64,000 nt of DNA from Auanema rhodensis (taxonomy: Eukaryota; Animalia; Nematoda): the NCBI GenBank assembly GCA_964057225.1, contig OZ059897.1:21824001-21888000 (forward strand), read 5' to 3'. Both the position numbers and the translations under genes were made by a program. The notes beneath the pieces were generated by a model. The model ran no database searches and was not told the DNA's origin. It worked only from the letters and a program-made list of their open reading frames with translations. Each line of letters starts with the position of its first letter. Position 1 is the first letter of the stretch. Below are positions 3,509 through 32,190 of this stretch, one piece after another.

Positions 3509-3522
3509 TTATGTACACGTTT
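3499..3522 (-). repeat. 12-bp tandem duplication at the LINE 3' junction, (AAACGTGTACAT)x2 on the minus strand
   Basis: The plus strand reads ATGTACACGTTT at 3499-3510 and again at 3511-3522. Ten of the 12 bases are satellite target sequence. An AATAAA overlaps it on the minus strand (plus TTTATT 3520-3525). Confidence 0.9.
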
Positions 3523-3712
3523 ATTGGTTTAATGTTCAATATTACAGGTTTAACGAAATGAGTAAATAGTTGTGTAGTAGGATGTATAAGAACCTTACAA
3601 TAGGAACAGGAAAAATAGGAAACATTATAAAACATAGTTAGGGAGAGAATGATCTGAGAATGAGTTGCAGTGAGCAGTTTCTTTCAAATTTTTCCAGTGA
3701 GAACAGGGGGTT

Positions 3713-3856
3713 TTGTTCAGCGAATTGCTGACCTCCGGTTGGTAGTTGTTGGGTACGGAGGTACTCATGATTCGAGCCGAGCCCGTTCTAACAATAGGAG
3801 GTAACTTGCATTCAATCCGTATGACTCATGTCTATAAGATTTGAAGCGAAGTAACA
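3713..3856 (-). ncRNA. Conserved structured cis-RNA element (predicted four-way junction) in the family A 3' UTR
   Basis: Aligns with 49322-49466 although the flanking UTR has diverged. Stems in plus coordinates: 3714-3717/3853-3856, 3718-3721/3727-3730, 3731-3736/3797-3802 and 3804-/-3852, with compensatory changes between families. Folded by hand. Confidence 0.7.
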
Positions 3857-3998
3857 AGAAGTGTAGAAGGGTTGGAAAAAAGAAATGAAACTGTCGCACT
3901 TAGTCATAATCAGAAAAACATTTAAAGAGAAAAAAACAAAAACGCGAAGAGTAATATGAAAAAAAAACAAAACAAAGAGATTATAACCAAGAATGAAC

Positions 3999-6557
3999 TT
4001 AACTACATAAAAATGTGGAAGGATCATGTTGTGAGCCTCGTAGGGCATTGTAGAGGTGTTTCTTGAAGCTTCCGATTTTTGTTTGTTGAATTAGGTTCTC
4101 AGGTAAGGAATTCCATGCCTTTATAGCTCTGTATTCGATGCCGTTTCTTGAAGTGTTTTTCCGAAGATTCGGAAAAACAACATTCCATTGGTGTCTACGT
4201 AGAGAGTGAGAAAAAAGTTTAATTTCAAAAATTCTAAATTCTGCCTCAGCTTTAATATGGTTAAAATAAAATAAAAGATCGGTTACCAGCCTTCTGGTTG
4301 ATAGATCATCGGCTTGAAGAGCGGTAAGCTGATCGGCGTAGCTAGAAAAAATTCCTGCCCTACAAAAAACTGCACGCAAAAACTTTTTCTGTACGTTTTC
4401 TATACGAGCTTTGTTTTTGTTATCCTGTGGTGACCATACGACTGATGCGTACTCAAGAATAGGACGAACATAGCAACAAAAAAGTCTAAACATTAAGACC
4501 GGGGATCTAGAATGAAAACAACGTAGGATAATGCGGCATTTTTGAGCTGCCAAGTTGCTAACATAGTTGATGTGACTACCAAATGATAAGTTTTGGTCTG
4601 TTAAAACTCCGAGGTCTTTATAGCTTGATGCTAGAGACAAAGGGAACTCACCGAAAGAAAACGTTTTTTCAATTTTTTGAGATGAGCTATCATCAGAAAA
4701 CACCATTATTTTAGTTTTGCTTGTGTTGACTCTCATTCCGTTGTTGTTACACCAATCATTAAGAGAATTGAGTGCATTTTGAAGACTTACCCGGTTAGTG
4801 CTGTACAGCTTGAGATCGTCAGCAAATAAAGTGGAATGAACGTCATCAGGGAGAAAAGATGTGATGTCGTTGATGTAAAAAAGAAAAAGAAGAGGGCCTA
4901 AAACAGTACCTTGGGGAACGCCACACAATAAATTGGTAGAGTTGGAGAGAGAATTATTGACCAAAACTGAGTAAGATCTGTTTGTGATGAAATTTTTGAG
5001 AAATGATAGAAGAGAGCCACGCACACCAATGGAGTGAAGTTTGTGGATGAGTATAGAGTGATTGATGAGGTCAAATGCTTTTGAGAAATCTATGAATGCA
5101 ACAAAAACTGGTAAGTTTTTGTCGATAGATGATCTCCAAGCAATATGACTGTTGATAATGGCTGAAACCGTATTACGCTTAGGAAGAAAAGCGTGTTGGT
5201 TAGAAGATATTGAACCGGTTGAAATGCCAAAGTTGAGTAGGGGAGAGCTTATAAGACGCTCAAAAACCTTGGAGAGACTAGGAGTAAGAGATATAGGACG
5301 ATAATTGGAAGGAGTAGAACGATTGCCGGATTTGAAGATTGGTCGAATCCAAGCTTTTTTCCAAGCAGGAGGACAGGATGAGGAAACGAGAAGATTGTGA
5401 AAAATGAAAGCCAGTGGGAGAGTGAGAGAGAAAGCGCATTGTTTGAGAAAGTAGTAAGGAATTCCGTCCGGAGAAGTTGAAACTCTAAGAGGAAGACGAG
5501 AAAGAACCTTGTAGACTTTGTCCGGAGAAATATCTATGAAGTCTATGGTAGAAGAAAAAGCAGGGGAAGGATTTATTTTTTTGAAAGAAGATCCTGGTTT
5601 GACAAAAAAAGTATCTGCGAAAACAGATGCTTTATCGCTGTCGGATGAGTACGTGTTGTTTTCACATTTAATGGTGGGGATATCTGAAGTGCATGCTCCA
5701 AGACGAGCTCTGCAAAATTGATAGAAAATTCTAGGGTTGTTGAGAGCTGCGGTTTTCTCTTCTTCAGAAGCAGATTTAAGTTTCAGAAGTCTATCAAGCT
5801 TGATAGTCAGTTTTTTGCGATGAAGTTCGTCTCGAGGGCAGATAGATGAACTAAGTCTGCTGATAAAACTAGAAAGACTAGCAATTTCTTTATCGATTTT
5901 GTTCTTTCGTTTTGGCTGCTTATAGGGAACAAACCTGTTAATGACAGAGTGAATAATTTCGATAAATTTTGTGTAGGAGTCCAGAGGAGTAAGAACGGAA
6001 AGTTCCGTAGCAAAGTCGATGCTGGCAAGGTGGTGGTTAATTATGTTGTAATCCGCCCGAAGAAAATTGAGTTGAGCAAAGTTTGGTAAAGAAGAATTGA
6101 TAGGTGAAACAACGGGAGGAAGAGACAAATCCGATCTGACAGAGTTGCTGAGTATAGAAAAAATGACAGAGTAGTGGTCGGAGTTACCTAAAGGGGAGGA
6201 ACGGACTATGTTACTGACCATAGTAGAATTATTTGTGATGATGTAGTCGAGAATATATTTTCCCCGGGTAGGAAAATTTACCAGCTGATCCGAACAGCTA
6301 TCTTTCAAAAATTGAAAAATAGATCCACTGGAGGGGGACGGGCGGGAAGATTCAGAAAGATCCCAGTTGATGTAGGGAAAATTTAAATCACCTGTGATGA
6401 GAAATGAACGGTTTTTTATATGGCCAGTAAGATCTGAAAGATAATGAGAAAAATCGGAATGAAGAGAAGAGGGAGAGCGGTAACAAACCGAAAATCTGTG
6501 TTGATAGAAGAGATGAGTATGTTGATGAATTGGACGGAAGAAGATTGAGAAGAACAA
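3999..6557 (-). CDS. LINE ORF2 main frame: C-terminal half of the APE endonuclease plus reverse transcriptase (CR1-like); true coding begins near 6490
   Basis: APE motifs CYRSP, ITGDLNFP, QLVNFPTRG..ILDYI and SDH. RT motifs NYRPISL..SLSKVFER, QHAF, FIDFSKAFD, GVPQGTVLGPLLFLFYIND, LFADDLK and KDLGV. CR1/L2-type C-terminus YVRPILEYASVVWSP..IENVQKKF..WNSLP. Confidence 0.95.
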   Translation of the reverse strand: MFFSIFFRPIHQHTHLFYQHRFSVCYRSPSSLHSDFSHYLSDLTGHIKNRSFLITGDLNFPYINWDLSESSRPSPSSGSIFQFLKDSCSDQLVNFPTRGKYILDYIITNNSTMVSNIVRSSPLGNSDHYSVIFSILSNSVRSDLSLPPVVSPINSSLPNFAQLNFLRADYNIINHHLASIDFATELSVLTPLDSYTKFIEIIHSVINRFVPYKQPKRKNKIDKEIASLSSFISRLSSSICPRDELHRKKLTIKLDRLLKLKSASEEEKTAALNNPRIFYQFCRARLGACTSDIPTIKCENNTYSSDSDKASVFADTFFVKPGSSFKKINPSPAFSSTIDFIDISPDKVYKVLSRLPLRVSTSPDGIPYYFLKQCAFSLTLPLAFIFHNLLVSSSCPPAWKKAWIRPIFKSGNRSTPSNYRPISLTPSLSKVFERLISSPLLNFGISTGSISSNQHAFLPKRNTVSAIINSHIAWRSSIDKNLPVFVAFIDFSKAFDLINHSILIHKLHSIGVRGSLLSFLKNFITNRSYSVLVNNSLSNSTNLLCGVPQGTVLGPLLFLFYINDITSFLPDDVHSTLFADDLKLYSTNRVSLQNALNSLNDWCNNNGMRVNTSKTKIMVFSDDSSSQKIEKTFSFGEFPLSLASSYKDLGVLTDQNLSFGSHINYVSNLAAQKCRIILRCFHSRSPVLMFRLFCCYVRPILEYASVVWSPQDNKNKARIENVQKKFLRAVFCRAGIFSSYADQLTALQADDLSTRRLVTDLLFYFNHIKAEAEFRIFEIKLFSHSLRRHQWNVVFPNLRKNTSRNGIEYRAIKAWNSLPENLIQQTKIGSFKKHLYNALRGSQHDPSTFLCS

Positions 6558-6886
6558 GAAAGTAAGGTAGAGTTAATAGATTTTTTGATGAAGATAAGAG
6601 TGCCGCCGCCACGGGCTGTACACTTGTCGGCTCTGAAAAGATTGTAATAGTTACCGAGCGGAATATGATTAGAGTTGAAATTGGGAAAAAGCCAGGATTC
6701 TGATATAGCAATGATATCAGGAGATGAAATACTATGGATAGTAGTAAGAAAATGAAATTTGTTGAGAATAGAGCGTGCATTATAACAATGAACAGAAAAA
6801 TTAACAGGGACACAGGAACTGGACGTAGTTGACGGTTGTGAAGCCTTAACGAAATAACCTGTTCGTATCAGACTCAGGTTGAGATG
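6482..6886 (-). pseudogene. N-terminal half of the APE endonuclease of ORF2, in a different frame (not in the ORF track)
   Basis: Manual translation of the frame open from 6886: ..VHCYNARSILNKFHFL..SPDIIAISESWLFPNF..GNYYNLFRADKCTARGGGTLIFIKKS..TDFRFV. These are the standard first APE motifs (N-x-R-S, D-I-I-x-x-x-E-x-W-L, R-x-D..R-G-G-G). This frame must shift near 6481-6495 to join VCYRSP in the main frame. Confidence 0.88.
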
Positions 6887-7901
6887 TTATATTAGAACCG
6901 CTTTTAGATCTGGTATGGTACTCGGAATTGGTTTTAGTACAGCGTGGGGGATTTTTCCTCTTTCTGGGGCTGATTGAAAATCTCTCAACCGTAGAAAGAG
7001 GTTTGGATCTACCTGCTGAACGGCTATTCCTACCAGATTTAGAAGGCGGACTGGATATTACAACAGTGTCGGACACAGACGGACAAGGAACGATAGGGTC
7101 ATTTTGGACCACAGGACAGAGACTGGAGACATTTTGAGAAGCATTAATGTTTGAGAGAACATGAATAGAGGGTGAAGTTGATTTACGAAGAACCTTGATA
7201 AGTTTAAGGTCGCGTACAAGGTAAATTGATTCATTATTGTCCAGATTTTTATTTTTAGCTTCCTCACGTAGTTTTTTTTCTATTTCTACCTCGAAAGGAA
7301 GATAGTCGCGGCGAATAAAAGTTTTTGACAAACAAGCAAAGCATTTCGCTTTGTTGGACTTAATGATATCAATAATTTTGTCACGTAAATCAACTGTTGA
7401 ACATGAAATTACAAGAGGACCAAGAGATTTAGATTTTAGAGTTGAACGGGTTATAGTAATTTGGTTGCTGTTAATGAGAGAAGTCAAAGTAGAGTCGTTA
7501 GATTTTTCAACGACAAGTTTTAGGAGAGAAGTGGGGTCCGAGGGTAGTTCGGATGAGTCGTGGGGAACACGAAACCACACCGCTCTATTCAAACGATAGG
7601 AAAACTTTGACTCCTCAGATCTAACTTTTTGAACCTGACACAGAACAGTAGAAGAGGATGATTGAGAGGTAGAAGTAACAATAGATTTTGATACATTAAG
7701 AAATTTCTTTTCTAAACCCTCAATACGTAACTTGAAATCGTCTTCGAGATTTTTAATACGCATTTCATTAACCGCAACATTGGTTTTAATGTTGTTCAGC
7801 TCGTTTTTAATTTCAGCAGAAAGTTGTGAAAAAGAATCACGAAGAGATTTGGAAAGAACATCAAGTGTTTCAGTAAAAAAATCTTTTGTTACAACTGACA
7901 T
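6846..7901 (-). CDS. LINE ORF1 protein (351 aa; coiled coil, RRM/CTD-like region, basic Ser-rich tail)
   Basis: Likely start ATG at 7901 (MSVVTKDFF). Heptad-rich N-terminus (LSKSLRDSFSQLSAEIKNELNNIKTNV..MRIKNLEDDFKLRIEGLEKK), then motifs typical of L1/CR1-type ORF1 (GPLVI..LRDKII, FIRRDY..E..LREEA..YLVRDLKL). Lies directly upstream of APE-RT. Confidence 0.85.
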   Translation of the reverse strand: MSVVTKDFFTETLDVLSKSLRDSFSQLSAEIKNELNNIKTNVAVNEMRIKNLEDDFKLRIEGLEKKFLNVSKSIVTSTSQSSSSTVLCQVQKVRSEESKFSYRLNRAVWFRVPHDSSELPSDPTSLLKLVVEKSNDSTLTSLINSNQITITRSTLKSKSLGPLVISCSTVDLRDKIIDIIKSNKAKCFACLSKTFIRRDYLPFEVEIEKKLREEAKNKNLDNNESIYLVRDLKLIKVLRKSTSPSIHVLSNINASQNVSSLCPVVQNDPIVPCPSVSDTVVISSPPSKSGRNSRSAGRSKPLSTVERFSISPRKRKNPPRCTKTNSEYHTRSKSGSNITSQPESDTNRLFR

Positions 7902-8084
7902 GATAATATTGAAAAAAAAAGTGAATGAAAATAGGAAAAATAGAGAGATAAAAACAAGTGAAAATGGAGAAAAGATAGGTGATACAAATGAGAAAGATAA
8001 GTAAAAAAGTGAGTAATGGACAAGAAAAAATAAATGAAAAAAAATTAGAATAAATGTATAAAAACAGGAAAAAGTAGCGTAAAG
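7902..8084 (-). other. Pyrimidine-rich 5' UTR of the family A element
   Basis: 183 nt between the satellite junction and the ORF1 ATG. Strongly T/C-rich on the sense strand. Confidence 0.65.
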
Positions 8085-10999
8085 CACGTGATGTGCACTT
8101 GGTATGTAACTTGCTTCACGTGAAAGATAAAGAGATGCGGTTTTCAAAATTAGATTCCCCATGTCCATATTAGTCTAAAAACAAATTTTTATTGATATTG
8201 GTGCATGGTAACCATGACTTTGAAATTTACGTCTACTTTAATTTATGCTAATTAAATGTACACGTGATGTGCACTTGGTATGTAACTCGCTTCACGTGAA
8301 AGATAAAGAGATGCGGTTTTCAAAATTAGATTCCCCATGTCCATATTAGTCTAAAAACAAATTTTTATTGATATTGGTGCATGGTAACCATGACTTTGAA
8401 ATTTACGTCTACTTTAATTTATGCTAATTAAATGTACACGTGATGTGCACTTGGTATGTAACTCGCTTCACGTGAAAGATAAAGAGATGCGGTTTTCAAA
8501 ATTAGATTCCCCATGTCCATATTAGTCTAAAAACAAATTTTTATTGATATTGGTGCATGGTAACCATGACTTTGAAATTTACGTGAACTTTAATTTATGC
8601 TAATTAAATGTACACGTGATGTGCACTTGGTATGTAATTCGCTTCACGTGAAAGATAAAGAGATGCGGTTTTTACAATTAGATTCCCCATGTCCATATTA
8701 GTCTAAAAACAAATTTTTATTGATATTGGTTCATGGTAACCATGACTTTGAAATTTACGTGAACTTAAATTTATGCTAATTAAATGTACACGTGATGTGC
8801 ACTTGGTATGTAACTTGCTTCACGTGAAAGATAAAGAGATGCGGCTTTCAAAATTAGATTCCCCATGTCCATATTAGTCTAAAAACAAATTTTTATTGAT
8901 ATTGGTGCATGGTAACCATGACTTTGAAATTTACGTGAACTTTAATTTATGCTAATTAAATGTACACGTGATGTGCACTTGGTATGTAACTCGCTTCACG
9001 TGAAAGATAAAGAGATGCGGTTTTCAAAATTAGATTCCCCATGTCCATATTAGTCTAAAAACAAATTTTTATTGATATTGGTGCATGGTAACCATGACTT
9101 TGAAATTTACGTGAACTTTAATTTATGCTAATTAAATGTACACGTGATGTGCACTTGGTATGTAACTCGCTTCACGTGAAAGATAAAGAGATGCGGTTTT
9201 CAAAATTAGATTTCCCATGTCCATATTAGTCTAAAAACAAATTTTTATTGATATTGGTTCATGGTAACCATGACTTTGAAATTTACGTGAACTTTAATTT
9301 ATGCTAATTAAATGTACACGTGATGTGCACTTGGTATGTAACTTGCTTCACGTGAAAGATAAAGAGATGCGGCTTTCAAAATTAGATTCCCCATGTCCAT
9401 ATTAGTCTAAAAACAAATTTTTATTGATATTGGTGCATGGTAACCATGACTTTGAAATTTACGTGAACTTTAATTTATGCTAATTAAATGTACACGTGAT
9501 GTGCACTTGGTATGTAACTCGCTTCACGTGAAAGATAAAGAGATGCGGTTTTCAAAATTAGATTCCCCATGTCCATATTAGTCTAAAAACAAATTTTTAT
9601 TGATATTGGTGCATGGTAACCATGACTTTGAAATTTACGTGAACTTTAATTTATGCTAATTAAATGTACACGTGATGTGCACTTGGTATGTAACTCGCTT
9701 CACGTGAAAGATAAAGAGATGCGGTTTTCAAAATTAGATTCCCCATGTCCATATTAGTCTAAAAACAAATTTTTATTGATATTGGTTCATGGTAACCATG
9801 ACTTTGAAATTTACGTGAACTTTAATTTATGCTAATTAAATGTACACGTGATGTGCACTCGGTATGTAACTCGCTTCACGTGAAAGATAAAGAGATGCGG
9901 TTTTCAAAATTAGATTCCCCATGTCCATATTAGTCTAAAAACAAATTTTTATTGATATTGGTGCATGGTAACCATGACTTTGAAATTTACGTGAACTTTA
10001 ATTTATGCTAATTAAATGTACACGTGATGTGCACTTGGTATGTAACTCGCTTCACGTGAAAGATAAAGAGATGCGGTTTTCAAAATTAGATTCCCCATGT
10101 CCATATTAGTCTAAAAACAAATTTTTATTGATATTGGTGCGTGGTAACCATGATTTTGAAATTTACGTGAACTTTAATTTATGCTAATTAAATATACACG
10201 TGATGTGCACTTGGTATGTAACTCGCTTCACGTGAAAGATAAAGAGATGCAGTTTTCAAAATTAGATTCCCCATGTCCATATTAGTCTAAAAACAAATTT
10301 TTATTGATATTGGTTCATGGTAACCATGACTTTGAAATTTACGTGAACTTAAATTTATGCTAATTAAATGTACACGTGATGTGCACTTGGTATGTAACTT
10401 GCTTCACGTGAAAGATAAAGAGATGCGGTTTTCAAAATTAGATTCCCCATGTCCATATTAGTCTAAAAACAAATTTTTATTGATATTGGTGCATGGTAAC
10501 CATGACTTTGAAATTTACGTGAACTTTAATTTATGCTAATTAAATGTACACGTGATGTGCACTTGGTATGTAACTCGCTTCACGTGAAAGATAAAGAGAT
10601 GCGGTTTTCAAAATTAGATTCCCCATGTCCATATTAGTCTAAAAACAAATTTTTATTGATATTGGTGCGTGGTAACCATGATTTTGAAATTTACGTGAAC
10701 TTTAATTTATGCTAATTAAATGTACACGTGATGTGCACTTGGTATGTAACTCGCTTCACGTGAAAGATAAAGAGATGCAGTTTTCAAAATTAGATTCCCC
10801 ATGTCCATATTAGTCTAAAAACAAATTTTTATTGATATTGGTTCATGGTAACCATGACTTTGAAATTTACGTGAACTTAAATTTATGCTAATTAAATGTA
10901 CACGTGATGTGCACTTGGTATGTAACTTGCTTCACGTGAAAGATAAAGAGATGCGGTTTTCAAAATTAGATTCCCCATGTCCATATTAGTCTAAAAACA

Positions 11000-13900
11000 A
11001 ATTTTTATTGATATTGGTGCATGGTAACCATGACTTTGAAATTTACGTGAACTTTAATTTATGCTAATTAAATGTACACGTGATGTGCACTTGGTATGTA
11101 ACTCGCTTCACGTGAAAGATAAAGAGATGCGGTTTTCAAAATTAGATTCCCCATGTCTATATTAGTCTAAAAACAAATTTTTATTGATATTGGTTCATGG
11201 TAACCATGACTTTGAAATTTACGTGAACTTTAATTTATGCTAATTAAATGTACACGTGATGTGCACTTGGTATGTAACTCGCTTCACGTGAAAGATAAAG
11301 AGATGCGGTTTTCAAAATTAGATTCCCCATGTCCATATTAGTCTAAAAACAAATTTTTATTGATATTGGTGCGTGGTAACCATGACTTTGAAATTTACGT
11401 GAACTTTAATTTATGCTAATTAAATGTACACGTGATGTGCACTTGGTATGTAACTCGCTTCACGTGAAAGAGAAAGAGATGCGGTTTTCAAAATTAGATT
11501 CCCCATGTCCATATTAGTCTAAAAACAAATTTTTATTGATATTGGTTCATGGTAACCATGACTTTGAAATTTACGTGAACTTTGATTTATGCTAATTAAA
11601 TGTACACGTGATGTGCACTTGGTATGTAACTCGCTTCACGTGAAAGAGAAAGAGATGCGGTTTTCAAAATTAGATTCCCCATGCCCATATTAGTCTAAAA
11701 ACAAATTTTTATTGATATTGGTGCATGGTAACCATGACTTTGAAATTTACGTGAACTTTAATTTATGCTAATTAAATGTACACGTGATGTGCACTTGGTA
11801 TGTAACTCGCTTCACGTGAAAGATAAAGAGATGCGGTTTTCAAAATTAGATTCCTCATGTCCATATTAGTCTAAAAACAAATTTTTATTGATATTGGTTC
11901 ATGGTAACCATGACTTTGAAGTTTACGTGAACTTTTATTTATGCTAATTAAATGTACACGTGATGTGCACTTGGTATGTAACTCGCTTCACGTGAAAGAT
12001 AAAGAGATGCGGTTTTCAAAATTAGATTCCCCATCTCCATATTAGTCTAAAAACAAATTTTTATTGATATTGGTGCATGGTAACCATGACTTTGAAATTT
12101 ACGTGAACTTTAATTTATGCTAATTAAATGTACACGTGATGTGCACTTGGTATGTAACTCGCTTCACGTGAAAGATAAAGAGATGCGGTTTTCAAAATTA
12201 GATTCCCCATGTCCATATTAGTCTAAAAACAAATTTTTATTGATATTGGTGCGTGGTAACCATGACTTTGAAATTTACGTGAACTTTAATTTATGCTAAT
12301 TAAATGTACACGTGATGTGCACTTGGTATGTAACTCGCTTCACGTGAAAGATAAAGAGATGCGGTTTTCAAAATTAGATTCCCCATGTCCATATTAGTCT
12401 AAAAACAAATTTTTATTGATATTGGTTCATGGTAACCATGACTTTGAAATTTACGTGAACTTAAATTTATGCTAATTAAATGTACACGTGATGTGCACTT
12501 GGTATGTAACTTGCTTCACGTGAAAGATAAAGAGATGCGGTTTTCAAAATTAGATTCCCCATGTCCATATTAGTCTAAAAACAAATTTATATTGATATTG
12601 GTGCATGGTAACCATGACTTTGAAATTTACGTGAACTTTAATTTATGCTAATTAAATGTACACGTGATGTGCACTTGGTATGTAACTCGCTTCACGTGAA
12701 AGATAAAGAGATGCGGTTTTCAAAATTAGATTCCCCATGTCCATATTAGTCTAAAAACAAATTTTTATTGATATTGGTGCATGGTAACCATGACTTTGAA
12801 ATTTACGTGAACTTTAATTTATGCTAATTAAATGTACACGTGATGTGCACTTGGTATGTAACTCGCTTCACGTAAAAGATAAAGAGATGCGGTTTTCAAA
12901 ATTAGATTCCCCATGTCTATATTAGTCTAAAAACAAATTTTTATTGATATTGGTTCATGGTAACCATGACTTTGAAATTTACGTGAACTTTAATTTATGC
13001 TAATTAAATGTACACGTGATGTGCACTTGGTATGTAACTCGCTTCACGTGAAAGATAAAGAGATGCGGTTTTCAAAATTAGATTCCCCATGTCCATATTA
13101 GTCTAAAAACAAATTTTTATTGATATTGGTGCGTGGTAACCATGACTTTGAAATTTACGTGAACTTTAATTTATGCTAATTAAATGTACACGTGATGTGC
13201 ACTTGGTATGTAACTCGCTTCACGTGAAAGAGAAAGAGATGCGGTTTTCAAAATTAGATTCCCCATGTCCATATTAGTCTAAAAACAAATTTTTATTGAT
13301 ATTGGTTCATGGTAACCATGACTTTGAAATTTACGTGAACTTTGATTTATGCTAATTAAATGTACACGTGATGTGCACTTGGTATGTAACTCGCTTCACG
13401 TGAAAGAGAAAGAGATGCGGTTTTCAAAATTAGATTCCCCATGCCCATATTAGTCTAAAAACAAATTTTTATTGATATTGGTGCATGGTAACCATGACTT
13501 TGAAATTTACGTGAACTTTAATTTATGCTAATTAAATGTACACGTGATGTGCACTTGGTATGTAACTCGCTTCACGTGAAAGATAAAGAGATGCGGTTTT
13601 CAAAATTAGATTCCTCATGTCCATATTAGTCTAAAAACAAATTTTTATTGATATTGGTTCATGGTAACCATGACTTTGAAGTTTACGTGAACTTTTATTT
13701 ATGCTAATTAAATGTACACGTGATGTGCACTTGGTATGTAACTCGCTTCACGTGAAAGATAAAGAGATGCGGTTTTCAAAATTAGATTCCCCATCTCCAT
13801 ATTAGTCTAAAAACAAATTTTTATTGATATTGGTGCATGGTAACCATGACTTTGAAATTTACGTGAACTTTAATTTATGCTAATTAAATGTACACGTGAT

Positions 13901-14700
13901 GTGCACTTGGTATGTAACTCGCTTCACGTGAAAGATAAAGAGATGCGGTTTTCAAAATTAGATTCCCCATGTCCATATTAGTCTAAAAACAAATTTTTAT
14001 TGATATTGGTGCGTGGTAACCATGACTTTGAAATTTACGTGAACTTTAATTTATGCTAATTAAATGTACACGTGATGTGCACTTGGTATGTAACTCGCTT
14101 CACGTGAAAGATAAAGAGATGCGGTTTCCAAAATTAGATTCCCCATGTCCATATTAGTCTAAAAACAAATTTTTATTGATATTGGTTCATGGTAACCATG
14201 ACTTTGAAATTTACGTGAACTTAAATTTATGCTAATTAAATGTACACGTGATGTGCACTTGGTATGTAACTTGCTTCACGTGAAAGATAAAGAGATGCGG
14301 TTTTCAAAATTAGATTCCCCATGTCCATATTAGTCTAAAAACAAATTTATATTGATATTGGTGCATGGTAACCATGACTTTGAAATTTACGTGAACTTTA
14401 ATTTATGCTAATTAAATGTACACGTGATGTGCACTTGGTATGTAACTCGCTTCACGTGAAAGATAAAGAGATGCGGTTTTCAAAATTAGATTCCCCATGT
14501 CCATATTAGTCTAAAAACAAATTTTTATTGATATTGGTGCATGGTAACCATGACTTTGAAATTTACGTGAATTTTAATTTATGCTAATTAAATGTACACG
14601 TGATGTGCACTTGGTATGTAACTCGCTTCACGTGAAAGATAAAGAGATGCGGTTTTCAAAATTAGATTCCCCATGTCTATATTAGTCTAAAAACAAATTT
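11000..14700. repeat. 10-monomer (1760-bp) higher-order repeat, about 2 copies
   Basis: Diagnostic variants recur at +1760: CCATGTCTAT at 11151/12911/14671, ATGCCCATAT at 11681/13441, ACAAATTTAT at 12581/14341. Boundaries approximate. Confidence 0.85.
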
Positions 14701-17049
14701 TTATTGATATTGGTTCATGGTAACCATGACTTTGAAATTTACGTGAACTTTAATTTATGCTAATTAAATGTACACGTGATGTGCACTTGGTATGTAACTC
14801 GCTTCACGTGAAAGATAAAGAGATGCGGTTTTCAAAATTAGATTCCCCATGTCCATATTAGTCTAAAAACAAATTTTTATTGATATTGGTGCATGGTAAC
14901 CATGACTTTGAAATTTACGTGAACTTTAATTTATGCTAATTAAATGTACACGTGATGTGCACTTGGTATGTAACTCGCTTCACGTGAAAGATAAAGAGAT
15001 GCGGTTTTCAAAATTAGATTCCCCATGTCCATATTAGTCTAAAAACAAATTTTTATTGATATTGGTGCATGGTAACCATGACTTTGAAATTTACGTGAAC
15101 TTTAATTTATGCTAATTAAATGTACACGTGATGTGCACTTGGTATGTAACTCGCTTCACGTGAAAGATAAAGAGATGCGGTTTTCAAAATTAGATTCCCC
15201 ATGTCCATATTAGTCTAAAAACAAATTTTTATTGATATTGGTTCATGGTAACCATGACTTTGAAATTTACGTGAACTTTAATTTATGCTAATTAAATGTA
15301 CACGTGATGTGCACTTGGTATGTAACTCGCTTCACGTGAAAGATAAAGAGATGCGGTTTTCAAAATTAGATTCCCCATGTCCATATTAGTCTAAAAACAA
15401 ATTTTTATTGATATTGGTGCATGGTAACCATGACTTTGAAATTTACGTGAACTTTAATTTATGCTAATTAAATGTACACGTGATGTGCACTTGGTATGTA
15501 ACTCGCTTCACGTGAAAGATAAAGAGATGCGGTTTTCAAAATTAGATTCCCCATGTCCATATTAGTCTAAAAACAAATTTTTATTGATATTGGTTCATGG
15601 TAACCATGACTTTGAAATTTACGTGAACTTTAATTTATGCTAATTAAATGTACACGTGATGTGCACTTGGTATGTAACTCGCTTCACGTGAAAGATAAAG
15701 AGATGCGGTTTTCAAAATTAGATTCCCCATGTCCATATTAGTCTAACAACAAATTTTTATTGATATTGGTGCATGGTAACCATGACTTTGAAATTTACGT
15801 GAACTTTAATTTATGCTAATTAAATGTACACGTGATGTGCACTTGGTATGTAACTCGCTTCACGTGGAAGATAAAGAGATGCGGTTTTCAAAATTAGATT
15901 CCCCATGTCCATATTAGTCTAAAAACAAATTTTTATTGATATTGGTTCATGGTAACCATGACTTTGAAATTTACGTGAATTTTAATTTATGCTAATTAAA
16001 TGTACACGTGATGTGCACTTGGTATGTAACTCGCTTCACGTGGAAGATAAAGAGATGCGGTTTTCAAAATTAGATTCCCCATGTCCATATTAGTCTAAAA
16101 ACAAATTTTTATTGATATTGGTTCATGGTAACCATGACTTTGAAATTTACGTGAACTTTAATTTATGCTAATTAAATGTACACGTGATGTGCACTTGGTA
16201 TGTAACTCGCTTCACGTGAAAGATAAAGAGATGCGGTTTTCAAAATTAGATTCCCCATGTCCATATTAGTCTAAAAACAAATTTTTATTGATATTGGTGC
16301 ATGGTAACCATGACTTTGAAATTTACGTGTACTTTAATTTATGCTAATTAAATGTACACGTGATGTGCACTTGGTATGTAACTCGCTTCACGTGAAAGAT
16401 AAAGAGATGCGGTTTTCAAAATTAGATTCCCCAAGACCATATTAGTCTAAAAACAAATTTTTATTGATATTGGTTCATGGTAACCATGACTTTGAAATTT
16501 ACGTGAACTTTAATTTATGCTAATTAAATGTACACGTGATGTGCACTTGGTATGTAACTCGCTTCACGTGAAAGATAAAGAGATGCGGTTTTCAAAATTA
16601 GATTCCCCATGTCCATATTAGTCTAAAAACAAATTTTTATTGATATTGGTTCATGGTAACCATGACTTTGAAATTTACGTGAACTTTGATTTATGCTAAT
16701 TAAATGTACACGTGATGTGCACTTGGTATGTAACTCGCTTCACGTGAAAGAGAAAGAGATGCGGTTTTCAAAATTAGATTCCCCATGCCCATATTAGTCT
16801 AAAAACAAATTTTTATTGATATTGGTGCATGGTAACCATGACTTTGAAATTTACGTGAACTTTAATTTATGCTAATTAAATGTACACGTGATGTGCACTT
16901 GGTATGTAACTCGCTTCACGTGAAAGATAAAGAGATGCGGTTTTCAAAATTAGATTCCTCATGTCCATATTAGTCTAAAAACAAATTTTTATTGATATTG
17001 GTTCATGGTAACCATGACTTTGAAGTTTACGTGAACTTTTATTTATGCT

Positions 17050-20000
17050 AATTAAATGTACACGTGATGTGCACTTGGTATGTAACTCGCTTCACGTGAA
17101 AGATAAAGAGATGCGGTTTTCAAAATTAGATTCCCCATCTCCATATTAGTCTAAAAACAAATTTTTATTGATATTGGTGCATGGTAACCATGACTTTGAA
17201 ATTTACGTGAACTTTAATTTATGCTAATTAAATGTACACGTGATGTGCACTTGGTATGTAACTCGCTTCATGTGAAAGATAAAGAGATGCGGTTATCAAA
17301 ATTAGATTCCCCATGTCCATATTAGTCTGAAAACAAATTTTTATTGATATTGGTTCATGGTAACCATGACTTTGAAATTTACGTGAACTTTAATTTATGC
17401 TAATTAAATGTACACGTGATGTGCACTTGGTATGTAACTCGCTTCACGTGGAAGATAAAGAGATGCGGTTTTCAAAATTAGATTCCCCATGTCCATATTA
17501 GTCTAAAAACAAATTTTTATTGATATTGGTTCATGGTAACCATGACTTTGAAGTTTACGTGAACTTTTATTTATGCTAATTAAATGTACACGTGATGTGC
17601 ACTTGGTATGTAACTCGCTTCACGTGAAAGATAAAGAGATGCGGTTTTCAAAATTAGATTCCCCATCTCCATATTAGTCTAAAAACAAATTTTTATTGAT
17701 ATTGGTGCATGGTAACCATGACTTTGAAATTTACGTGAACTTTAATTTATGCTAATTAAATGTACACGTGATGTGCACTTGGTATGTAACTCGCTTCATG
17801 TGAAAGATAAAGAGATGCGGTTATCAAAATTAGATTCCCCATGTCCATATTAGTCTGAAAACAAATTTTTATTGATATTGGTTCATGGTAACCATGACTT
17901 TGAAATTTACGTGAACTTTAATTTATGCTAATTAAATGTACACGTGATGTGCACTTGGTATGTAATTCGCTTCACGTGGAAGATAAAGAGATGCGGTTTT
18001 CAAAATTGGATTCCCCATGTCCATATTAGTCTAAAAACAAATTTTTATTGATATTGGTTCATGGTAACCATGACTTTGAAATTTACGTGAATTTTAATTT
18101 ATGCTAATTAAATGTACACGTGATGTGCACTTGGTATGTAACTCGCTTCACGTGGAAGATAAAGAGATGCGGTTTTCAAAATTAGATTCCCCATGTCCAT
18201 ATTAGTCTAAAAACAAATTTTTATTGATATTGGTTCATGGTAACCATGACTTTGAAATTTACGTGAACTTTAATTTATGCTAATTAAATGTACACGTGAT
18301 GTGCACTTGGTATGTAACTCGCTTCACGTGGAAGATAAAGAGATGCGGTTTTCAAAATTAGATTCCCCATGTCCATATTAGTCTAAAAACAAATTTTTAT
18401 TGATATTGGTGCATGGTAACCATGACTTTGAAATTTACGTGTACTTTAATTTATGCTAATTAAATGTACACGTGATGTGCACTTGGTATGTAACTCGCTT
18501 CACGTGAAAGATAAAGAGATGCGGTTTTCAAAATTAGATTCCCCATGTCCATATTAGTCTAAAAACAAATTTTTATTGATATTGGTTCATGGTAACCATG
18601 ACTTTGAAATTTACGTGAACTTTGATTTATGCTAATTAAATGTACACGTGATGTGCACTTGGTATGTAACTCGCTTCACGTGAAAGAGAAAGAGATGCGG
18701 TTTTCAAAATTAGATTCCCCATGTCCATATTAGTCTAAAAACAAATTTTTATTGATATTGGTGCATGGTAACCATGACTTTGAAATTTACGTGAACTTTA
18801 ATTTATGCTAATTAAATGTACACGTGATGTGCACTTGGTATGTAACTCGCTTCACGTGAAAGATAAAGAGATGCGGTTTTCAAAATTAGATTCCTCATGT
18901 CCATATTAGTCTAAAAACAAATTTTTATTGATATTGGTTCATGGTAACCATGACTTTGAAGTTTACGTGAACTTTTATTTATGCTAATTAAATGTACACG
19001 TGATGTGCACTTGGTATGTAACTCGCTTCACGTGAAAGATAAAGAGATGCGGTTTTCAAAATTAGATTCCCCATCTCCATATTAGTCTAAAAACAAATTT
19101 TTATTGATATTGGTGCATGGTAACCATGACTTTGAAATTTACGTGAACTTTAATTTATGCTAATTAAATGTACACGTGATGTGCACTTGGTATGTAACTC
19201 GCTTCATGTGAAAGATAAAGAGATGCGGTTATCAAAATTAGATTCCCCATGTCCATATTAGTCTGAAAACAAATTTTCATTGATATTGGTTCATGGTAAC
19301 CATGACTTTGAAATTTACGTGAACTTTAATTTATGCTAATTAAATGTACACGTGATGTGCACTTGGTATGTAACTCGCTTCACGTGAAAGATAAAGAGAT
19401 GCGGTTTTCAAAATTAGATTCCCCATGTCCATATTAGTCTAAAAACAAATTTTTATTGATATTGGTGCATGGTAACCATGACTTTGAAATTTACGTGAAC
19501 TTTAATTTATGCTAATTAAATGTACACGTGATGTGCACTTGGTATGTAACTCGCTTCACGTGAAAGATAAAGAGATGCGGTTTTCAAAATTAGATTCCCC
19601 ATGTCCATATTAGTCTAAAAACAAATTTTTATTGATATTGGTGCATGGTAACCATGACTTTGAAATTTACGTGAACTTTAATTTATGCTAATTAAATGTA
19701 CACGTGATGTGCACTTGGTATGTAACTCGCTTCACGTAAAAGATAAAGAGATGCGGTTTTCAAAATTAGATTCCCCATGTCCATATTAGTCTAAAAACAA
19801 ATTTTTATTGATATTGGTTCATGGTAACCATGACTTTGAAATTTACGTGAACTTTAATTTATGCTAATTAAATGTACACGTGATGTGCACTTGGTATGTA
19901 ACTCGCTTCACGTGAAAGATAAAGAGATGCGGTTTTCAAAATTAGATTCCCCATGTCCATATTAGTCTAAAAACAAATTTTTATTGATATTGGTGCATGG

Positions 20001-23000
20001 TAACCATGACTTTGAAATTTACGTGAACTTTAATTTATGCTAATTAAATGTACACGTGATGTGCACTTGGTATGTAACTCGCTTCACGTGAAAGATAAAG
20101 AGATGCGGTTTTCACAATTAGATTCCCCATCTCCATATTAGTCTAAAAACAAATTTTTATTGATATTGGTGCATGGTAACCATGACTTTGAAATTTACGT
20201 GAACTTTAATTTATGCTAATTAAATGTACACGTGATGTGCACTTTGTATGTAACTCGCTTCACGTGAAAGATAAAGAGATGCGGTTTTCAAAATTAGATT
20301 CCCCATGTCCATATTAGTCTAAAAACAAATTTTTATTGATATTGGTTCATGGTAACCATGACTTTGAAATTTACGTGAACTTTAATTTATGCTAATTAAA
20401 TGTACACGTGATGTGCACTTGGTATGTAACTCGCTTCACGTGAAAGATAAAGAGATGCGGTTTTCAAAATTAGATTCCCCATGTCCATATTAGTCTAAAA
20501 ACAAATTTTTATTGATATTGGTTCATGGTAACCATGACTTTGAAATTTACGTGAACTTTGATTTATGCTAATTAAATGTACACGTGATGTGCACTTGGTA
20601 TGTAACTCGTTTCACGTGAAAGATAAAGAGATGCGGTTTTCAAAATTAGATTCCCCATGTCCATATTAGTCTAAAAACAAATTTTTATTGATATTGGTGC
20701 ATGGTAACCATGACTTTGAAATTTACGTGTACTTTAATTTATGCTAATTAAATGTACACGTGATGTGCACTTGGTATGTAACTCGCTTCACGTGAAAGAT
20801 AAAGAGATGCGGTTTTCAAAATTAGATTCCCCAAGTCCATATTAGTCTAAAAACAAATTTTTATTGATATTGGTTCATGGTAACCATGACTTTGAAATTT
20901 ACGTGAACTTTAATTTATGCTAATTAAATGTACACGTGATGTGCACTTGGTATGTAACTCGCTTCACGTGAAAGATAAAGAGATGCGGTTTTCAAAATTA
21001 GATTCCCCATGTCCATATTAGTCTAAAAACAAATTTTTATTGATATTGGTTCATGGTAACCATGACTTTGAAATTTACGTGAACTTTGATTTATGCTAAT
21101 TAAATGTACACGTGATGTGCACTTGGTATGTAACTCGCTTCACGTGAAAGAGAAAGAGATGCGGTTTTCAAAATTAGATTCCCCATGTCCATATTAGTCT
21201 AAAAACAAATTTTTATTGATATTGGTGCATGGTAACCATGACTTTGAAATTTACGTGAACTTTAATTTATGCTAATTAAATGTACACGTGATGTGCACTT
21301 GGTATGTAACTCGCTTCACGTGAAAGATAAAGAGATGCGGTTTTCAAAATTAGATTCCTCATGTCCATATTAGTCTAAAAACAAATTTTTATTGATATTG
21401 GTTCATGGTAACCATGACTTTGAAGTTTACGTGAACTTTTATTTATGCTAATTAAATGTACACGTGATGTGCACTTGGTATGTAACTCGCTTCACGTGAA
21501 AGATAAAGAGATGCGGTTTTCAAAATTAGATTCCCCATCTCCATATTAGTCTAAAAACAAATTTTTATTGATATTGGTGCATGGTAACCATGACTTTGAA
21601 ATTTACGTGAACTTTAATTTATGCTAATTAAATGTACACGTGATGTGCACTTGGTATGTAACTCGCTTCATGTGAAAGATAAAGAGATGCGGTTATCAAA
21701 ATTAGATTCCCCATGTCCATATTAGTCTGAAAACAAATTTTTATTGATATTGGTTCATGGTAACCATGACTTTGAAATTTACGTGAACTTTAATTTATGC
21801 TAATTAAATGTACACGTGATGTGCACTTGGTATGTAACTCGCTTCACGTGGAAGATAAAGAGATGCGGTTTTCAAAATTAGATTCCCCATGTCCATATTA
21901 GTCTAAAAACAAATTTTTATTGATATTGGTTCATGGTAACCATGACTTTGAAGTTTACGTGAACTTTTATTTATGCTAATTAAATGTACACGTGATGTGC
22001 ACTTGGTATGTAACTCGCTTCACGTGAAAGATAAAGAGATGCGGTTTTCAAAATTAGATTCCCCATCTCCATATTAGTCTAAAAACAAATTTTTATTGAT
22101 ATTGGTGCATGGTAACCATGACTTTGAAATTTACGTGAACTTTAATTTATGCTAATTAAATGTACACGTGATGTGCACTTGGTATGTAACTCGCTTCATG
22201 TGAAAGATAAAGAGATGCGGTTATCAAAATTAGATTCCCCATGTCCATATTAGTCTGAAAACAAATTTTTATTGATATTGGTTCATGGTAACCATGACTT
22301 TGAAATTTACGTGAACTTTAATTTATGCTAATTAAATGTACACGTGATGTGCACTTGGTATGTAATTCGCTTCACGTGGAAGATAAAGAGATGCGGTTTT
22401 CAAAATTAGATTCCCCATGTCCATATTAGTCTAAAAACAAATTTTTATTGATATTGGTTCATGGTAACCATGACTTTGAAATTTACGTGAATTTTAATTT
22501 ATGCTAATTAAATGTACACGTGATGTGCACTTGGTATGTAACTCGCTTCACGTGGAAGATAAAGAGATGCGGTTTTCAAAATTAGATTCCCCATGTCCAT
22601 ATTAGTCTAAAAACAAATTTTTATTGATATTGGTTCATGGTAACCATGACTTTTAAATTTACGTGAACTTTAATTTATGCTAATTAAATGTACACGTGAT
22701 GTGCACTTGGTATGTAACTCGCTTCACGTGGAAGATAAAGAGATGCGGTTTTCAAAATTAGATTCCCCATGTCCATATTAGTCTAAAAACAAATTTTTAT
22801 TGATATTGGTTCATGGTAACCATGACTTTGAAATTTACGTGAACTTTAATTTATGCTAATTAAATGTACACGTGATGTGCACTTGGTATGTAACTCGCTT
22901 CACGTGAAAGATAAAGAGATGCGGTTTTCAAAATTAGATTCCCCATGTCCATATTAGTCTAAAAACAAATTTTTATTGATATTGGTGCATGGTAACCATG

Positions 23001-26000
23001 ACTTTGAAATTTACGTGTACTTTAATTTATGCTAATTAAATGTACACGTGATGTGCACTTGGTATGTAACTCGCTTCACGTGAAAGATAAAGAGATGCGG
23101 TTTTCAAAATTAGATTCCCCAAGTCCATATTAGTCTAAAAACAAATTTTTATTGATATTGGTTCATGGTAACCATGACTTTGAAATTTACGTGAACTTTA
23201 ATTTATGCTAATTAAATGTACACGTGATGTGCACTTGGTATGTAACTCGCTTCACGTGAAAGATAAAGAGATGCGGTTTTCAAAATTAGATTCCCCATGT
23301 CCATATTAGTCTAAAAACAAATTTTTATTGATATTGGTTCATGGTAACCATGACTTTGAAATTTACGTGAACTTTGATTTATGCTAATTAAATGTACACG
23401 TGATGTGCACTTGGTATGTAACTCGCTTCACGTGAAAGAGAAAGAGATGCGGTTTTCAAAATTAGATTCCCCATGTCCATATTAGTCTAAAAACAAATTT
23501 TTATTGATATTGGTGCATGGTAACCATGACTTTGAAATTTACGTGAACTTTAATTTATGCTAATTAAATGTACACGTGATGTGCACTTGGTATGTAACTC
23601 GCTTCACGTGAAAGATAAAGAGATGCGGTTTTCAAAATTAGATTCCTCATGTCCATATTAGTCTAAAAACAAATTTTTATTGATATTGGTTCATGGTAAC
23701 CATGACTTTGAAGTTTACGTGAACTTTTATTTATGCTAATTAAATGTACACGTGATGTGCACTTGGTATGTAACTCGCTTCACGTGAAAGATAAAGAGAT
23801 GCGGTTTTCAAAATTAGATTCCCCATCTCCATATTAGTCTAAAAACAAATTTTTATTGATATTGGTGCATGGTAACCATGACTTTGAAATTTACGTGAAC
23901 TTTAATTTATGCTAATTAAATGTACACGTGATGTGCACTTGGTATGTAACTCGCTTCATGTGAAAGATAAAGAGATGCGGTTATCAAAATTAGATTCCCC
24001 ATGTCCATATTAGTCTGAAAACAAATTTTTATTGATATTGGTTCATGGTAACCATGACTTTGAAATTTACGTGAACTTTAATTTATGCTAATTAAATGTA
24101 CACGTGATGTGCACTTGGTATGTAACTCGCTTCACGTGAAAGATAAAGAGATGCGGTTTTCAAAATTAGATTCCCCATGTCCATATTAGTCTAAAAACAA
24201 ATTTTTATTGATATTGGTGCATGGTAACCATGACTTTGAAATTTACGTGAACTTTAATTTATGCTAATTAAATGTACACGTGATGTGCACTTGGTATGTA
24301 ACTCGCTTCACGTGAAAGATAAAGAGATGCGGTTCTCAAAATTAGATTCCCCATGTCCATATTAGTCTAAAAACAAATTTTTATTGATATTGGTGCATGG
24401 TAACCATGAATTTGAAATTTACGTGAACTTTAATTTATGCTAATTAAATGTACACGTGATGTGCACTTGGTATGTAACTCGCTTCACGTGAAAGATAAAG
24501 AGATGCGGTTTTCAAAATTAGATTCCCCATGTCCATATTAGTCTAAAAACAAATTTTTATTGATATTGGTGCATGGTAACCATGACTTTGAAATTTACGT
24601 GAACTTTAATTTATGCTAATTAAATGTACACGTGATGTGCACTTGGTATGTAACTCGCTTCACGTGAAAGATAAAGAGATGCGGTTTTCAAAATTAGATT
24701 CCCCATCTCCATATTAGTCTAAAAACAAATTTTTATTGATATTGGTGCATGGTAACCATGACTTTGAAATTTACGTGAACTTTAATTTATGCTAATTAAA
24801 TGTACACGTGATGTGCACTTGGTATGTAACTCGCTTCATGTGAAAGATAAAGAGATGCGGTTATCAAAATTAGATTCCCCATGTCCATATTAGTCTGAAA
24901 ACAAATTTTTATTGATATTGGTTCATGGTAACCATGACTTTGAAATTTACGTGAACTTTAATTTATGCTAATTAAATGTACACGTGATGTGCACTTGGTA
25001 TGTAACTCGCTTCACGTGGAAGATAAAGAGATGCGGTTTTCAAAATTAGATTCCCCATGTCCATATTAGTCTAAAAACAAATTTTTATTGATATTGGTTC
25101 ATGGTAACCATGACTTTGAAGTTTACGTGAACTTTTATTTATGCTAATTAAATGTACACGTGATGTGCACTTGGTATGTAACTCGCTTCACGTGAAAGAT
25201 AAAGAGATGCGGTTTTTAAAATTAGATTCCCCATCTCCATATTAGTCTAAAAACAAATTTTTATTGATATTGGTGCATGGTAACCATGACTTTGAAATTT
25301 ACGTGAACTTTAATTTATGCTAATTAAATGTACACGTGATGTGCACTTGGTATGTAACTCGCTTCATGTGAAAGATAAAGAGATGCGGTTATCAAAATTA
25401 GATTCCCCATGTCCATATTAGTCTGAAAACAAATTTTTATTGATATTGGTTCATGGTAACCATGACTTTGAAATTTACGTGAACTTTAATTTATGCTAAT
25501 TAAATGTACACGTGATGTGCACTTGGTATGTAATTCGCTTCACGTGGAAGATAAAGAGATGCGGTTTTCAAAATTAGATTCCCCATGTCCATATTAGTCT
25601 AAAAACAAATTTTTATTGATATTGGTTCATGGTAACCATGACTTTGAAATTTACGTGAATTTTAATTTATGCTAATTAAATGTACACGTGATGTGCACTT
25701 GGTATGTAACTCGCTTCACGTGGAAGATAAAGAGATGCGGTTTTCAAAATTAGATTCCCCATGTCCATATTAGTCTAAAAACAAATTTTTATTGATATTG
25801 GTTCATGGTAACCATGACTTTGAAATTTACGTGAACTTTAATTTATGCTAATTAAATGTACACGTGATGTGCACTTGGTATGTAACTCGCTTCACGTGGA
25901 AGATAAAGAGATGCGGTTTTCAAAATTAGATTCCCCATGTCCATATTAGTCTAAAAACAAATTTTTATTGATATTGGTGCATGGTAACCATGACTTTGAA

Positions 26001-32000: not shown

Positions 32001-32190
32001 ATTTATGCTAATTAAATGTACACGTGATGTGCACTTGGTATGTAACTCGCTTCACGTGAAAGATAAAGAGATGCGGTTTTCAAAATTAGATTCCCCATGT
32101 CCATATTAGTCTAAAAACAAATTTTTATTGATATTGGTGCATGGTAACCATGACTTTGAAATTTACGTGAACTTTAATTTATGCTAATTA
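17050..32190. repeat. 43-monomer (7568-bp) tandem duplication
   Basis: Rare variants recur at +7568: CCCCATCT 17133/24701, ATTTTCAT 19273/26841, ACTTTGTAT 20241/27809, and the CATGAATT variant base at 24410/31978. Boundaries approximate. Confidence 0.88.

What the first reader, a model, noticed from the sequence alone, without database searches (positions are those of the whole stretch)
3713..3856. Covarying four-way-junction RNA conserved in the 3' UTRs of both LINE families
Seen on the sense (minus) strand in both families (family B 49322-49466). A closing stem UGUU/AACA encloses three almost abutting arms. Arm 1 is ACUU..AAGU (A) or ACUA..UAGU (B), with inner AUCU/GGAU or AUCC/GGAU and a tip GAC-N4-GUC. 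Arm 2 is ACCUCC/GGAGGU (A) or ACCUCU/AGAGGU (B), continuing as UUGUU/AACAA or CUGUC/GUCAG, then CGG/CCG, then RCUC-N7-GAGU. Arm 3 is CAGC-AAUUC-GCUG or CAGUG-AUCUA-CACUG. An invariant AGAACGGGCUCG lies in arm 2. Several compensatory changes and G-U wobbles fit the sense RNA, while the UTR around it barely aligns. Established: CR1/L2 elements use short 3' stem-loops for RT recognition, and several retrotransposons carry HDV-like or hammerhead ribozymes. Inference: this larger fold, about 200 nt upstream of the 3' end, matches no motif I recognise. It may be a new ribozyme or processing element for satellite read-through transcripts, or an ORF2p-binding or targeting scaffold.
Basis: partly seen in the sequence, partly recalled or inferred. 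Interest (0 to 1): 0.85.

Follow-up and report, generated by a model that had tools for sequence, protein, structure and literature searches.

The report
Four-armed RNA shared by retrotransposons
A roughly 145-letter RNA that folds into four arms sits behind the genes of many diverged LINE jumping genes in this genome and also in an unrelated LTR retrotransposon; matched letter changes keep the fold, so it is a working RNA part that no catalogue lists and whose job is untested.

Summary
Energy folding gives it for each copy alone.

A covariance model finds the fold in at least 15 lineages of one LINE clade in this genome. It always lies 100-170 nt after the ORF2 stop, although ORF2 C-termini fall to 41-44% identity. 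With one sequence per lineage, 94% of cells pair and 28 of 45 pairs show compensatory changes, beyond all 500 shuffles and all slid controls. Loop cores such as AGAACGGGCUYG are invariant. Rfam has no match.

New here: the same module lies about 212 nt after the pol stop and about 250 nt before the 3' LTR of a ~9.75-kb gypsy-like LTR retrotransposon (at least 25 copies, open frames up to 2584 aa). The LINE tail is not recognisable beside it. The LINEs also carry a separate covarying 11-bp stem at their very 3' end, the more natural RT-priming signal.

My best reading (0.42) is a modular protein-binding platform for a factor both element classes can use. A LINE-specific ORF2p/ORF1p binding site with the LTR copy as a captured passenger is close behind (0.35). 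A ribozyme is unlikely. No RNA data or cross-species copies were found.

The scan met this fold before in other windows of this genome (s1-404634, s1-421329).

The parts
3713..3856 (-). RNA module, LINE family A: P1 3853-3856 with 3714-3717; arm 1 3804-3852 (tip UAUAGACAUGAGUCAUA 3820-3836); arm 2 3731-3802 (core AGAACGGGCUCG 3778-3789, CCGUACC 3752-3758); arm 3 3718-3730
   Evidence: CM score 153 bits
49322..49466 (-). RNA module, LINE family B copy 1: P1 49463-49466 with 49323-49326; arm 1 49414-49462; arm 2 49342-49412; arm 3 49327-49341
   Evidence: CM score 159 bits
53093..53237 (-). RNA module, LINE family B copy 2, same sequence as copy 1
3521..8084 (-). Full-length LINE family A inserted in the 176-bp satellite at CAC|GTG (limits approximate)
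   Evidence: satellite limits from TRF; ORFs; flanks read
3999..6557 (-). ORF2 with apurinic-type endonuclease and reverse transcriptase domains. This copy is frameshifted: its N-terminal part lies in another frame at 6388-6813; sister copies have open frames of 962 aa
   Evidence: Pfam RVT_1 4.8e-34, Exo_endo_phos_2 1.7e-08
6846..8168 (-). ORF1, no Pfam family, with a stretch that looks like a coiled coil by eye. The first ~90 codons of the listed ORF are read from satellite and 5' UTR; the true start is probably the Met near 7901 (inference)
3540..3602 (-). 3'-terminal domain of family A: 11-bp long-range stem UAUUGU(A)AGGUU (3591-3602) with AACCUGUAAUA (3540-3550), followed by UUGAAC..AAUAAAC and the target junction
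49118..49190 (-). The same 3'-terminal stem in family B: 49179-49190 with 49118-49128
49098..49873 (-). 5'-truncated LINE family B copy 1 (ORF2 C-terminal ~100 codons plus 3' UTR)
52868..53644 (-). 5'-truncated LINE family B copy 2
8085..49097 (.). 176-bp satellite array that hosts the insertions (also 1-3508, 49873-52868, 53644-64000)

Best explanation
The module is a selectively maintained, cis-acting protein-binding domain of the sense transcript. Four helices (P1 and arms 1-3) hold two invariant surfaces in place. One is the bulged tip of arm 1, UAU-A-GAC-AUKA-GUC-AUA-Y. The other is the pair of internal loops of arm 2, CAG-AA-CGG-GCUYG ... CCG-YAC-CUG. Shown: the fold, its covariation, its fixed place 100-215 nt behind the last stop codon, and its presence in two mechanistically unrelated retroelement classes. 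Inferred: the partner is a trans-acting factor that both an endonuclease-type LINE and an LTR element can use. The likeliest candidate is a host RNA-handling protein that promotes nuclear export, stability, translation or localisation of intronless, long-3'-UTR retroelement RNA. In this reading, RT priming in the LINEs is served by the separate terminal 11-bp stem and the AAUAAAC or microsatellite tail. The module would have moved from a LINE RNA into the LTR element's pol-PPT spacer, for instance by template switching, and been kept there because it works in that setting too.
For: The fold is real and constrained. It is present in LINE lineages A, B, C, D, E, F, G, L, M, O, P and Q, and by coordinates in H, I and J, with ORF2 C-terminal identity to family A down to 41-44%. 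Twelve unpaired positions are invariant in all 33 distinct sequences, the LTR copy included. By contrast, stringent LINE ORF2 proteins recognise only their cognate tail (abstract of PMC4176376). LTR context: the module at L087:1501-1646(-) follows a YLDD reverse transcriptase and a pol C-terminus whose distant relatives carry rve and Integrase_H2C2. In at least 25 copies the pol C-terminus ends 210-218 nt before a full-length module hit, with open frames up to 2584 aa. A polypurine tract and a TG... LTR start 231 nt after it. LTR pairs ~9743 bp apart bracket it in seven elements, for example C1:7503233 and C1:7512976 around the module at C1:7512582. Only the module core is shared with LINE UTRs, and a profile of the LINE tail finds nothing downstream in the LTR element. 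The LTR version is 54-64% identical to every LINE version, as deep as the deepest LINE splits, yet keeps 40 of 45 pairs. A separate covarying terminal stem exists in the LINEs.
Against: Only one LTR family and one LINE clade carry the module; a generally useful host-factor site might be expected in more families. The LTR copy could come from an unsampled deep LINE lineage and be a neutral passenger, because the K copies are near-identical and say little about constraint inside the LTR lineage. No binding partner, no RNA evidence and no copy in another species were found. Only one LTR copy (L087, a degenerate one) could be read in full; the others are known by coordinates and a 38-nt stretch.
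Confidence: 0.42

Rival explanations
1. LINE-specific RNP signal. The module is bound by the LINE's own ORF2p (the region between endonuclease and RT) or ORF1p, and is needed together with the terminal stem for cis-preferential target-primed reverse transcription, as the R2 3' UTR is. The LTR copy is a captured LINE fragment carried along without function.
For: Every lineage of this LINE clade has it at a fixed place in the 3' UTR, while only one LTR family does. Structured 3' UTR domains that bind the element's protein are established for stringent LINEs (PMC4176376) and, from general knowledge, for R2. Other notes of this scan, unchecked, report LTR elements of this genome capturing foreign RNA. 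Two earlier follow-ups reached this reading.
Against: The loop cores do not vary although ORF2 diverges to 41-44% identity, whereas cognate recognition is usually lineage-specific. The module lies 175-290 nt from the 3' end, and a separate covarying stem sits at the end itself. The LTR version is a deep branch with an intact core and 40 of 45 pairs, and has no LINE tail beside it.
Confidence: 0.35
2. A new self-cleaving ribozyme or RNA-processing signal in retroelement transcripts.
For: It is a multi-helix junction with invariant unpaired nucleotides and covarying helices, the general look of small ribozymes. No known family explains it.
Against: No ribozyme model matches at E<=10. Cleavage at this place would cut ORF2 from the LINE's priming end, and the LTR genome from its PPT and 3' LTR. 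The GUC in arm 1 is base-paired and covaries to GCC in lineage F. No RNA ends could be examined.
Confidence: 0.05
3. A different role for the structure: an antisense transcript, single-stranded cDNA during reverse transcription, or a decoy or shield against small-RNA silencing.
For: The antisense strand folds about as stably. The host is reported to be a nematode, where small-RNA silencing of transposons is prominent (general knowledge; host identity, unchecked).
Against: G.U cells outnumber A.C cells 70 to 26. The position and orientation are fixed relative to the coding strand in both element classes.
Confidence: 0.08

Closest known systems
3' tail stem-loop of stringent-type LINEs (UnaL2, ZfL2; L2/CR1 group), PMC4176376
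   Same: A structured RNA in the LINE 3' UTR, acting in cis on the sense transcript, in elements with microsatellite-like tails.
   Different: The known signal is one short stem-loop directly at the tail and is recognised only by the cognate ORF2p. Here that description fits the separate 11-bp terminal stem. The four-way junction is larger (~145 nt), lies 175-290 nt upstream, has an invariant core across diverged lineages, and also occurs in an LTR element.
R2 retrotransposon 3' UTR domain bound by the R2 protein (general knowledge)
   Same: A large, multi-helix, covarying 3' UTR domain of a site-specific LINE.
   Different: R2 uses a restriction-like endonuclease, whereas these LINEs have an apurinic-type one. 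R2 UTRs keep structure with little sequence conservation, whereas here the loop sequences are invariant. R2's domain is not known from LTR elements.
Retroviral and retrotransposon export or expression elements between the last ORF and the 3' LTR (MPMV CTE, IAP RTE, MusD MTE; the NXF1-binding part of the human L1 3' UTR) (general knowledge; context in PMC10309623)
   Same: In the LTR family, the module has the same place, between the pol stop and the PPT/3' LTR. It is a structured element that would act through a host factor, of a kind known from both LTR elements and a LINE.
   Different: No sequence or fold similarity was shown. No export function was tested. Each known element belongs to one element family and is not a shared homologous module.
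Conserved central domains of SINE superfamilies (CORE, V, Deu, Nin-DC, Meta; PMC4758252)
   Same: A conserved module of unknown function shared by otherwise unrelated retroposon families, with variable flanks.
   Different: Those sit in short non-autonomous elements and are defined by sequence. This one is in autonomous LINEs and an LTR element, and is defined by a covarying fold.
Ribozymes of retroelements (HDV-like in R2 and L1Tc 5' ends, hammerhead in Penelope-like elements and retrozymes)
   Same: A compact junction fold with an invariant core inside a retroelement transcript.
   Different: No model matches, and both the fold and the position are different.

Membership tests
Any Rfam 15 family | Covariance-model score at or above the gathering threshold, or at least a suggestive E-value | tested here: not met
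   Whole window at gathering: 0 hits. 3500-4000 at E<=10: only a chance HIV_GSL3 hit outside the module. Loci with the N, Q, L and O versions at E<=1: only flanking tRNAs.
Stringent-type LINE 3' tail stem-loop | Stem-loop directly upstream of the tail repeats at the extreme 3' end | tested here: not met
   The module ends 175-290 nt before the element end. The feature is met instead by the separate 11-bp terminal stem.
Stringent-type LINE 3' tail stem-loop | Bound specifically by the cognate ORF2 protein | not testable with these tools
   Needs binding or retrotransposition assays.
R2-type 3' UTR domain | Belongs to a LINE with a restriction-like endonuclease inserted in 28S rDNA | tested here: not met
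   ORF2 has Exo_endo_phos_2/Exo_endo_phos. The target is a 176-bp satellite.
Self-cleaving ribozymes (HDV-like, hammerhead, hairpin, twister, twister-sister, pistol, hatchet) | Match to the family's fold and catalytic core | tested here: not met
   No such Rfam model hits at E<=10 or E<=1. Self-cleavage itself was not testable.
CTE-like nuclear export element | Lies between the last ORF and the 3' LTR of an LTR element | tested here: met
   It lies ~212 nt after the pol stop and 231-249 nt before the LTR in family K/N.
CTE-like nuclear export element | Binds the host export receptor and rescues export of unspliced RNA | not testable with these tools
   Needs reporter and binding assays.
ENE-type triple-helix stability element | U-rich internal loop that clamps a downstream A-rich tract | tested here: not met
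   By inspection of alignment A3, the internal loops are AA/YAC and GCUYG/WHCW, not U-rich.

The most novel reading that the evidence does not exclude
The module is an exchangeable RNA cassette that has moved between a LINE clade and an LTR retrotransposon and is kept in both. It would be kept because it recruits one conserved host factor, making it an invertebrate counterpart of retroviral transport or stability elements, but homologous across element classes.
Probability: 0.35. Interest if true: 0.8.

Novelty: new variant of a known kind. Interest (0 to 1): 0.62.

Why it matters
Structured cis-acting RNAs in retrotransposon UTRs are known, but each has belonged to one element family. A homologous, strongly covarying module shared by endonuclease-type LINEs and a gypsy-like LTR element would be different. 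It would show that such RNA parts can be traded between retroelement classes. It would also point to a common dependency, probably a host factor, that could be found by pull-down. The module has an invariant core and clear compensatory pairs, which makes mutational tests simple to design. It is also a ready seed for a new RNA family.

Tried and rejected
- **More genome copies:** I did not try to get the letters another way. These groups are placed by coordinates only, plus the 38-nt stretches that one search printed.
- **Cross-species LINEs:** contigs of the three nearest ORF2 relatives (35-36% identity) have no module.
- **Metagenomes:** a core-pattern scan gave 104 pattern hits (80 loci returned), and none of those 80 matches the covariance model.
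- **LTR relatives:** the nearest relatives of the LTR family's pol C-terminus are only 35-38% identical, and their contigs have no module.
- **RNA evidence:** no run holds the stretch as RNA, and contigs of two runs guessed to be RNA laid nothing. DNA contigs of coded organisms B and C hold near-identical A and C lineages and add no new covariation.
- **Capture as a 5'-truncated LINE insertion in the LTR element:** blastn shares only the module core, and a profile of the LINE tail finds nothing. A short UAUUGUA match at a similar distance was judged too weak.
- **Alternative arm 1 to arm 2 pairing (GUCA with UGAC):** rejected, because lineage F changes GUC to GCC without a matching change.
- **Midge telomeric 176-bp repeat:** the published primer sequences of the Chironomus riparius repeats, compared by eye, are not in this satellite.
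- **Similarity to tRNA, 5S or 7SL seen by eye:** not supported by Rfam.

Full report
**Setting.** The window is a 176-bp satellite array with three LINE insertions on the minus strand.
- A full-length family A element lies at about 3521-8084. It has ORF1, and an ORF2 with apurinic-type endonuclease and reverse transcriptase domains.
- Two identical 5'-truncated family B copies lie at 49098-49873 and 52868-53644.
- The closest ORF2 relatives in the protein collection are only 36% identical, and the one named hit is a lizard reverse transcriptase at 28%. "CR1/L2-like" is therefore an inference from the domains and the microsatellite-type tails, not a tested placement.
- Other notes of this scan call the host a nematode. 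I did not check that.

**The observation.**
- Each folds on its own into a closing stem plus three arms.
- The antisense strands fold about as well, so energy does not identify the strand.
- Rfam has nothing at gathering thresholds for the whole window or at E<=10 for 3500-4000.

**More sequences.** DNA searches of the window's own genome gave further lineages.
The slid and shuffled controls were far lower.
- A covariance model built from these (R1) found 150 scored hits in clear score tiers. The tiers correspond to lineages I call A-G plus H, I, J, K, L, M, N, O, P and Q.
- On 33 distinct sequences, 94.6% of cells pair and 29 of 45 pairs are compensatory.
- On one sequence per lineage (11 distinct), 94.1% pair and 28 of 45 are compensatory. 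All five measures are reached by none of 500 shuffles, including the two that the tool describes as rarely exceeded without structure.
- All helices except the invariant CGG/CCG show compensatory changes, including the closing stem: UGUU/AACA becomes CAUU/AAUG in N and AUUU/AGAU in Q.
- Twelve unpaired positions never change. They are the AUKA loop of arm 1, and the AA, GCU.G, C and AC positions of the arm 2 loops.
- G.U cells outnumber A.C cells 70 to 26, which fits the sense strand.
- The core pattern occurs 149 times in the genome and never in the reversed control.

**Context in LINEs.** In A, B, C, D, E, F, G, L, M, O, P and Q the ORF2 C-terminus ends 100-170 nt upstream of the module. By coordinates the same holds for H, I and J.
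- Identity of the last 300-400 ORF2 residues to family A falls to 41-44% in L, M and Q. The RNA core is therefore better conserved than the protein.
- Downstream, the UTRs are unalignable except for a terminal domain. This is an 11-bp long-range stem, UAUUGU(A)AGGUU with AACCUGUGAUA, that has compensatory changes in C, L, M, O, P and Q. It is followed by UUGAAC-AAUAAAC and, in some lineages, (CAAA)n or (AAAT)n.
- That stem at the very end fits what is known for stringent LINEs, whose ORF2p recognises a cognate stem-loop at the tail (PMC4176376). It is the more natural RT-priming signal.

**The unexpected context.** The N copy (L087) has no LINE ORF upstream.
- Instead it follows a YLDD reverse transcriptase (Pfam RVT_1) and a pol C-terminus with a GPY-type motif. 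Distant relatives of that C-terminus carry rve, Integrase_H2C2 and RT_RNaseH domains.
- This pol C-terminus occurs many times in the genome. In at least 25 copies it ends 210-218 nt before a full-length module hit of group K, with open frames up to 2584 aa.
- 231 nt after the module in L087 come a polypurine tract and a TG-initiated repeat.
- That repeat occurs in pairs about 9743 bp apart that bracket pol and module in seven elements.
- Group K/N is therefore a ~9.75-kb gypsy-like LTR retrotransposon that carries the module between the pol stop and the 3' LTR.
- It shares with LINE UTRs only the module core, and a profile of the LINE terminal domain finds nothing downstream.
- Its module is 54-64% identical to every LINE version, as distant as the deepest LINE lineages are from each other, yet it keeps 40 of 45 pairs and all invariant loop positions.

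**What it most likely is.** Shown: a constrained sense-strand fold, at a fixed distance behind the last stop codon, in two retroelement classes that replicate in different ways.

Inferred: the helices are scaffolding, and the invariant loops of arms 1 and 2 are a recognition surface for a protein.

An LTR element does not use target-primed reverse transcription. The loops stay the same while ORF2 diverges. The LINEs have a separate terminal signal. For these reasons I favour a factor usable by both classes, most simply a host protein acting on export, stability, translation or localisation (0.42).

The close rival (0.35) is a LINE-specific ORF2p/ORF1p site, with the LTR copy a captured passenger.
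- Only one LTR family has the module.
- Its copies are too alike to show constraint within that lineage.
- Unchecked notes of this scan say LTR elements here capture foreign RNAs.

A ribozyme (0.05) fits neither the Rfam results nor the position, where cleavage would be harmful to both element types.

**Limits.**
- No RNA data exist among the runs offered.
- No homologue was found outside this genome: relatives' contigs and a metagenome scan were negative. Eukaryotic genomes of related species could not be searched.
- Only one LTR copy was read in full.

**Earlier work in this scan.** Two earlier follow-ups on other windows of this genome described the same four-armed fold in LINE tails and read it as a part needed for copying (s1-404634, s1-421329). 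I agree on the fold. I add the breadth of lineages, the terminal stem and the LTR-element copy, which shifts the likely mechanism.

Noticed in passing
window 3540-3602 and 49118-49190 (minus strand): A second covarying RNA element at the extreme 3' end of the LINEs. It is an 11-bp long-range stem, UAUUGU(A)AGGUU with AACCUGUGAUA, that encloses 40-55 variable nt, with compensatory changes in lineages C, L, M, O, P and Q. It is probably the RT-priming stem.
   Followed up: partly
L084, L086, L088, L089, L090 (downstream of the module): The tails differ by lineage: (CAAA)n in L and M, (AAAT)n in O, P and Q. A-G, L and M join the satellite at CAC|GTG. P and Q sit in the satellite in the opposite orientation at another site (…AAAT|TTATGC). 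The O copy lies outside the satellite.
   Followed up: partly
window 3499-3524: AAACGUGUACAU is present twice at the 3' junction of family A. The LINE tail therefore ends in target-like sequence, as another note of the scan (s1-393817) says.
   Followed up: no
window 6388-6813 versus 3999-6557: The window's family A ORF2 is frameshifted: its open frame is 857 aa, against 962 aa in sister copies elsewhere in the genome. The listed ORF1 start at 8168 is read from satellite sequence.
   Followed up: partly
L087:14-841: Five tandem tRNA genes with a period of about 189 bp lie next to the 3' LTR of the LTR-element copy, so the element sits beside a tRNA gene array.
   Followed up: no
G000:C3:10704578-10714748 and G000:C4:2668488-2673038: Module copies of the D-like group H recur at spacings of about 3.3-3.5 kb and 1.35-1.7 kb. 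LINE 3' parts have themselves become tandem repeats there.
   Followed up: no
window 3750: The window's family A copy has C where sister copies have T. This makes an A.C mismatch in the 7-bp inner helix of arm 2.
   Followed up: yes
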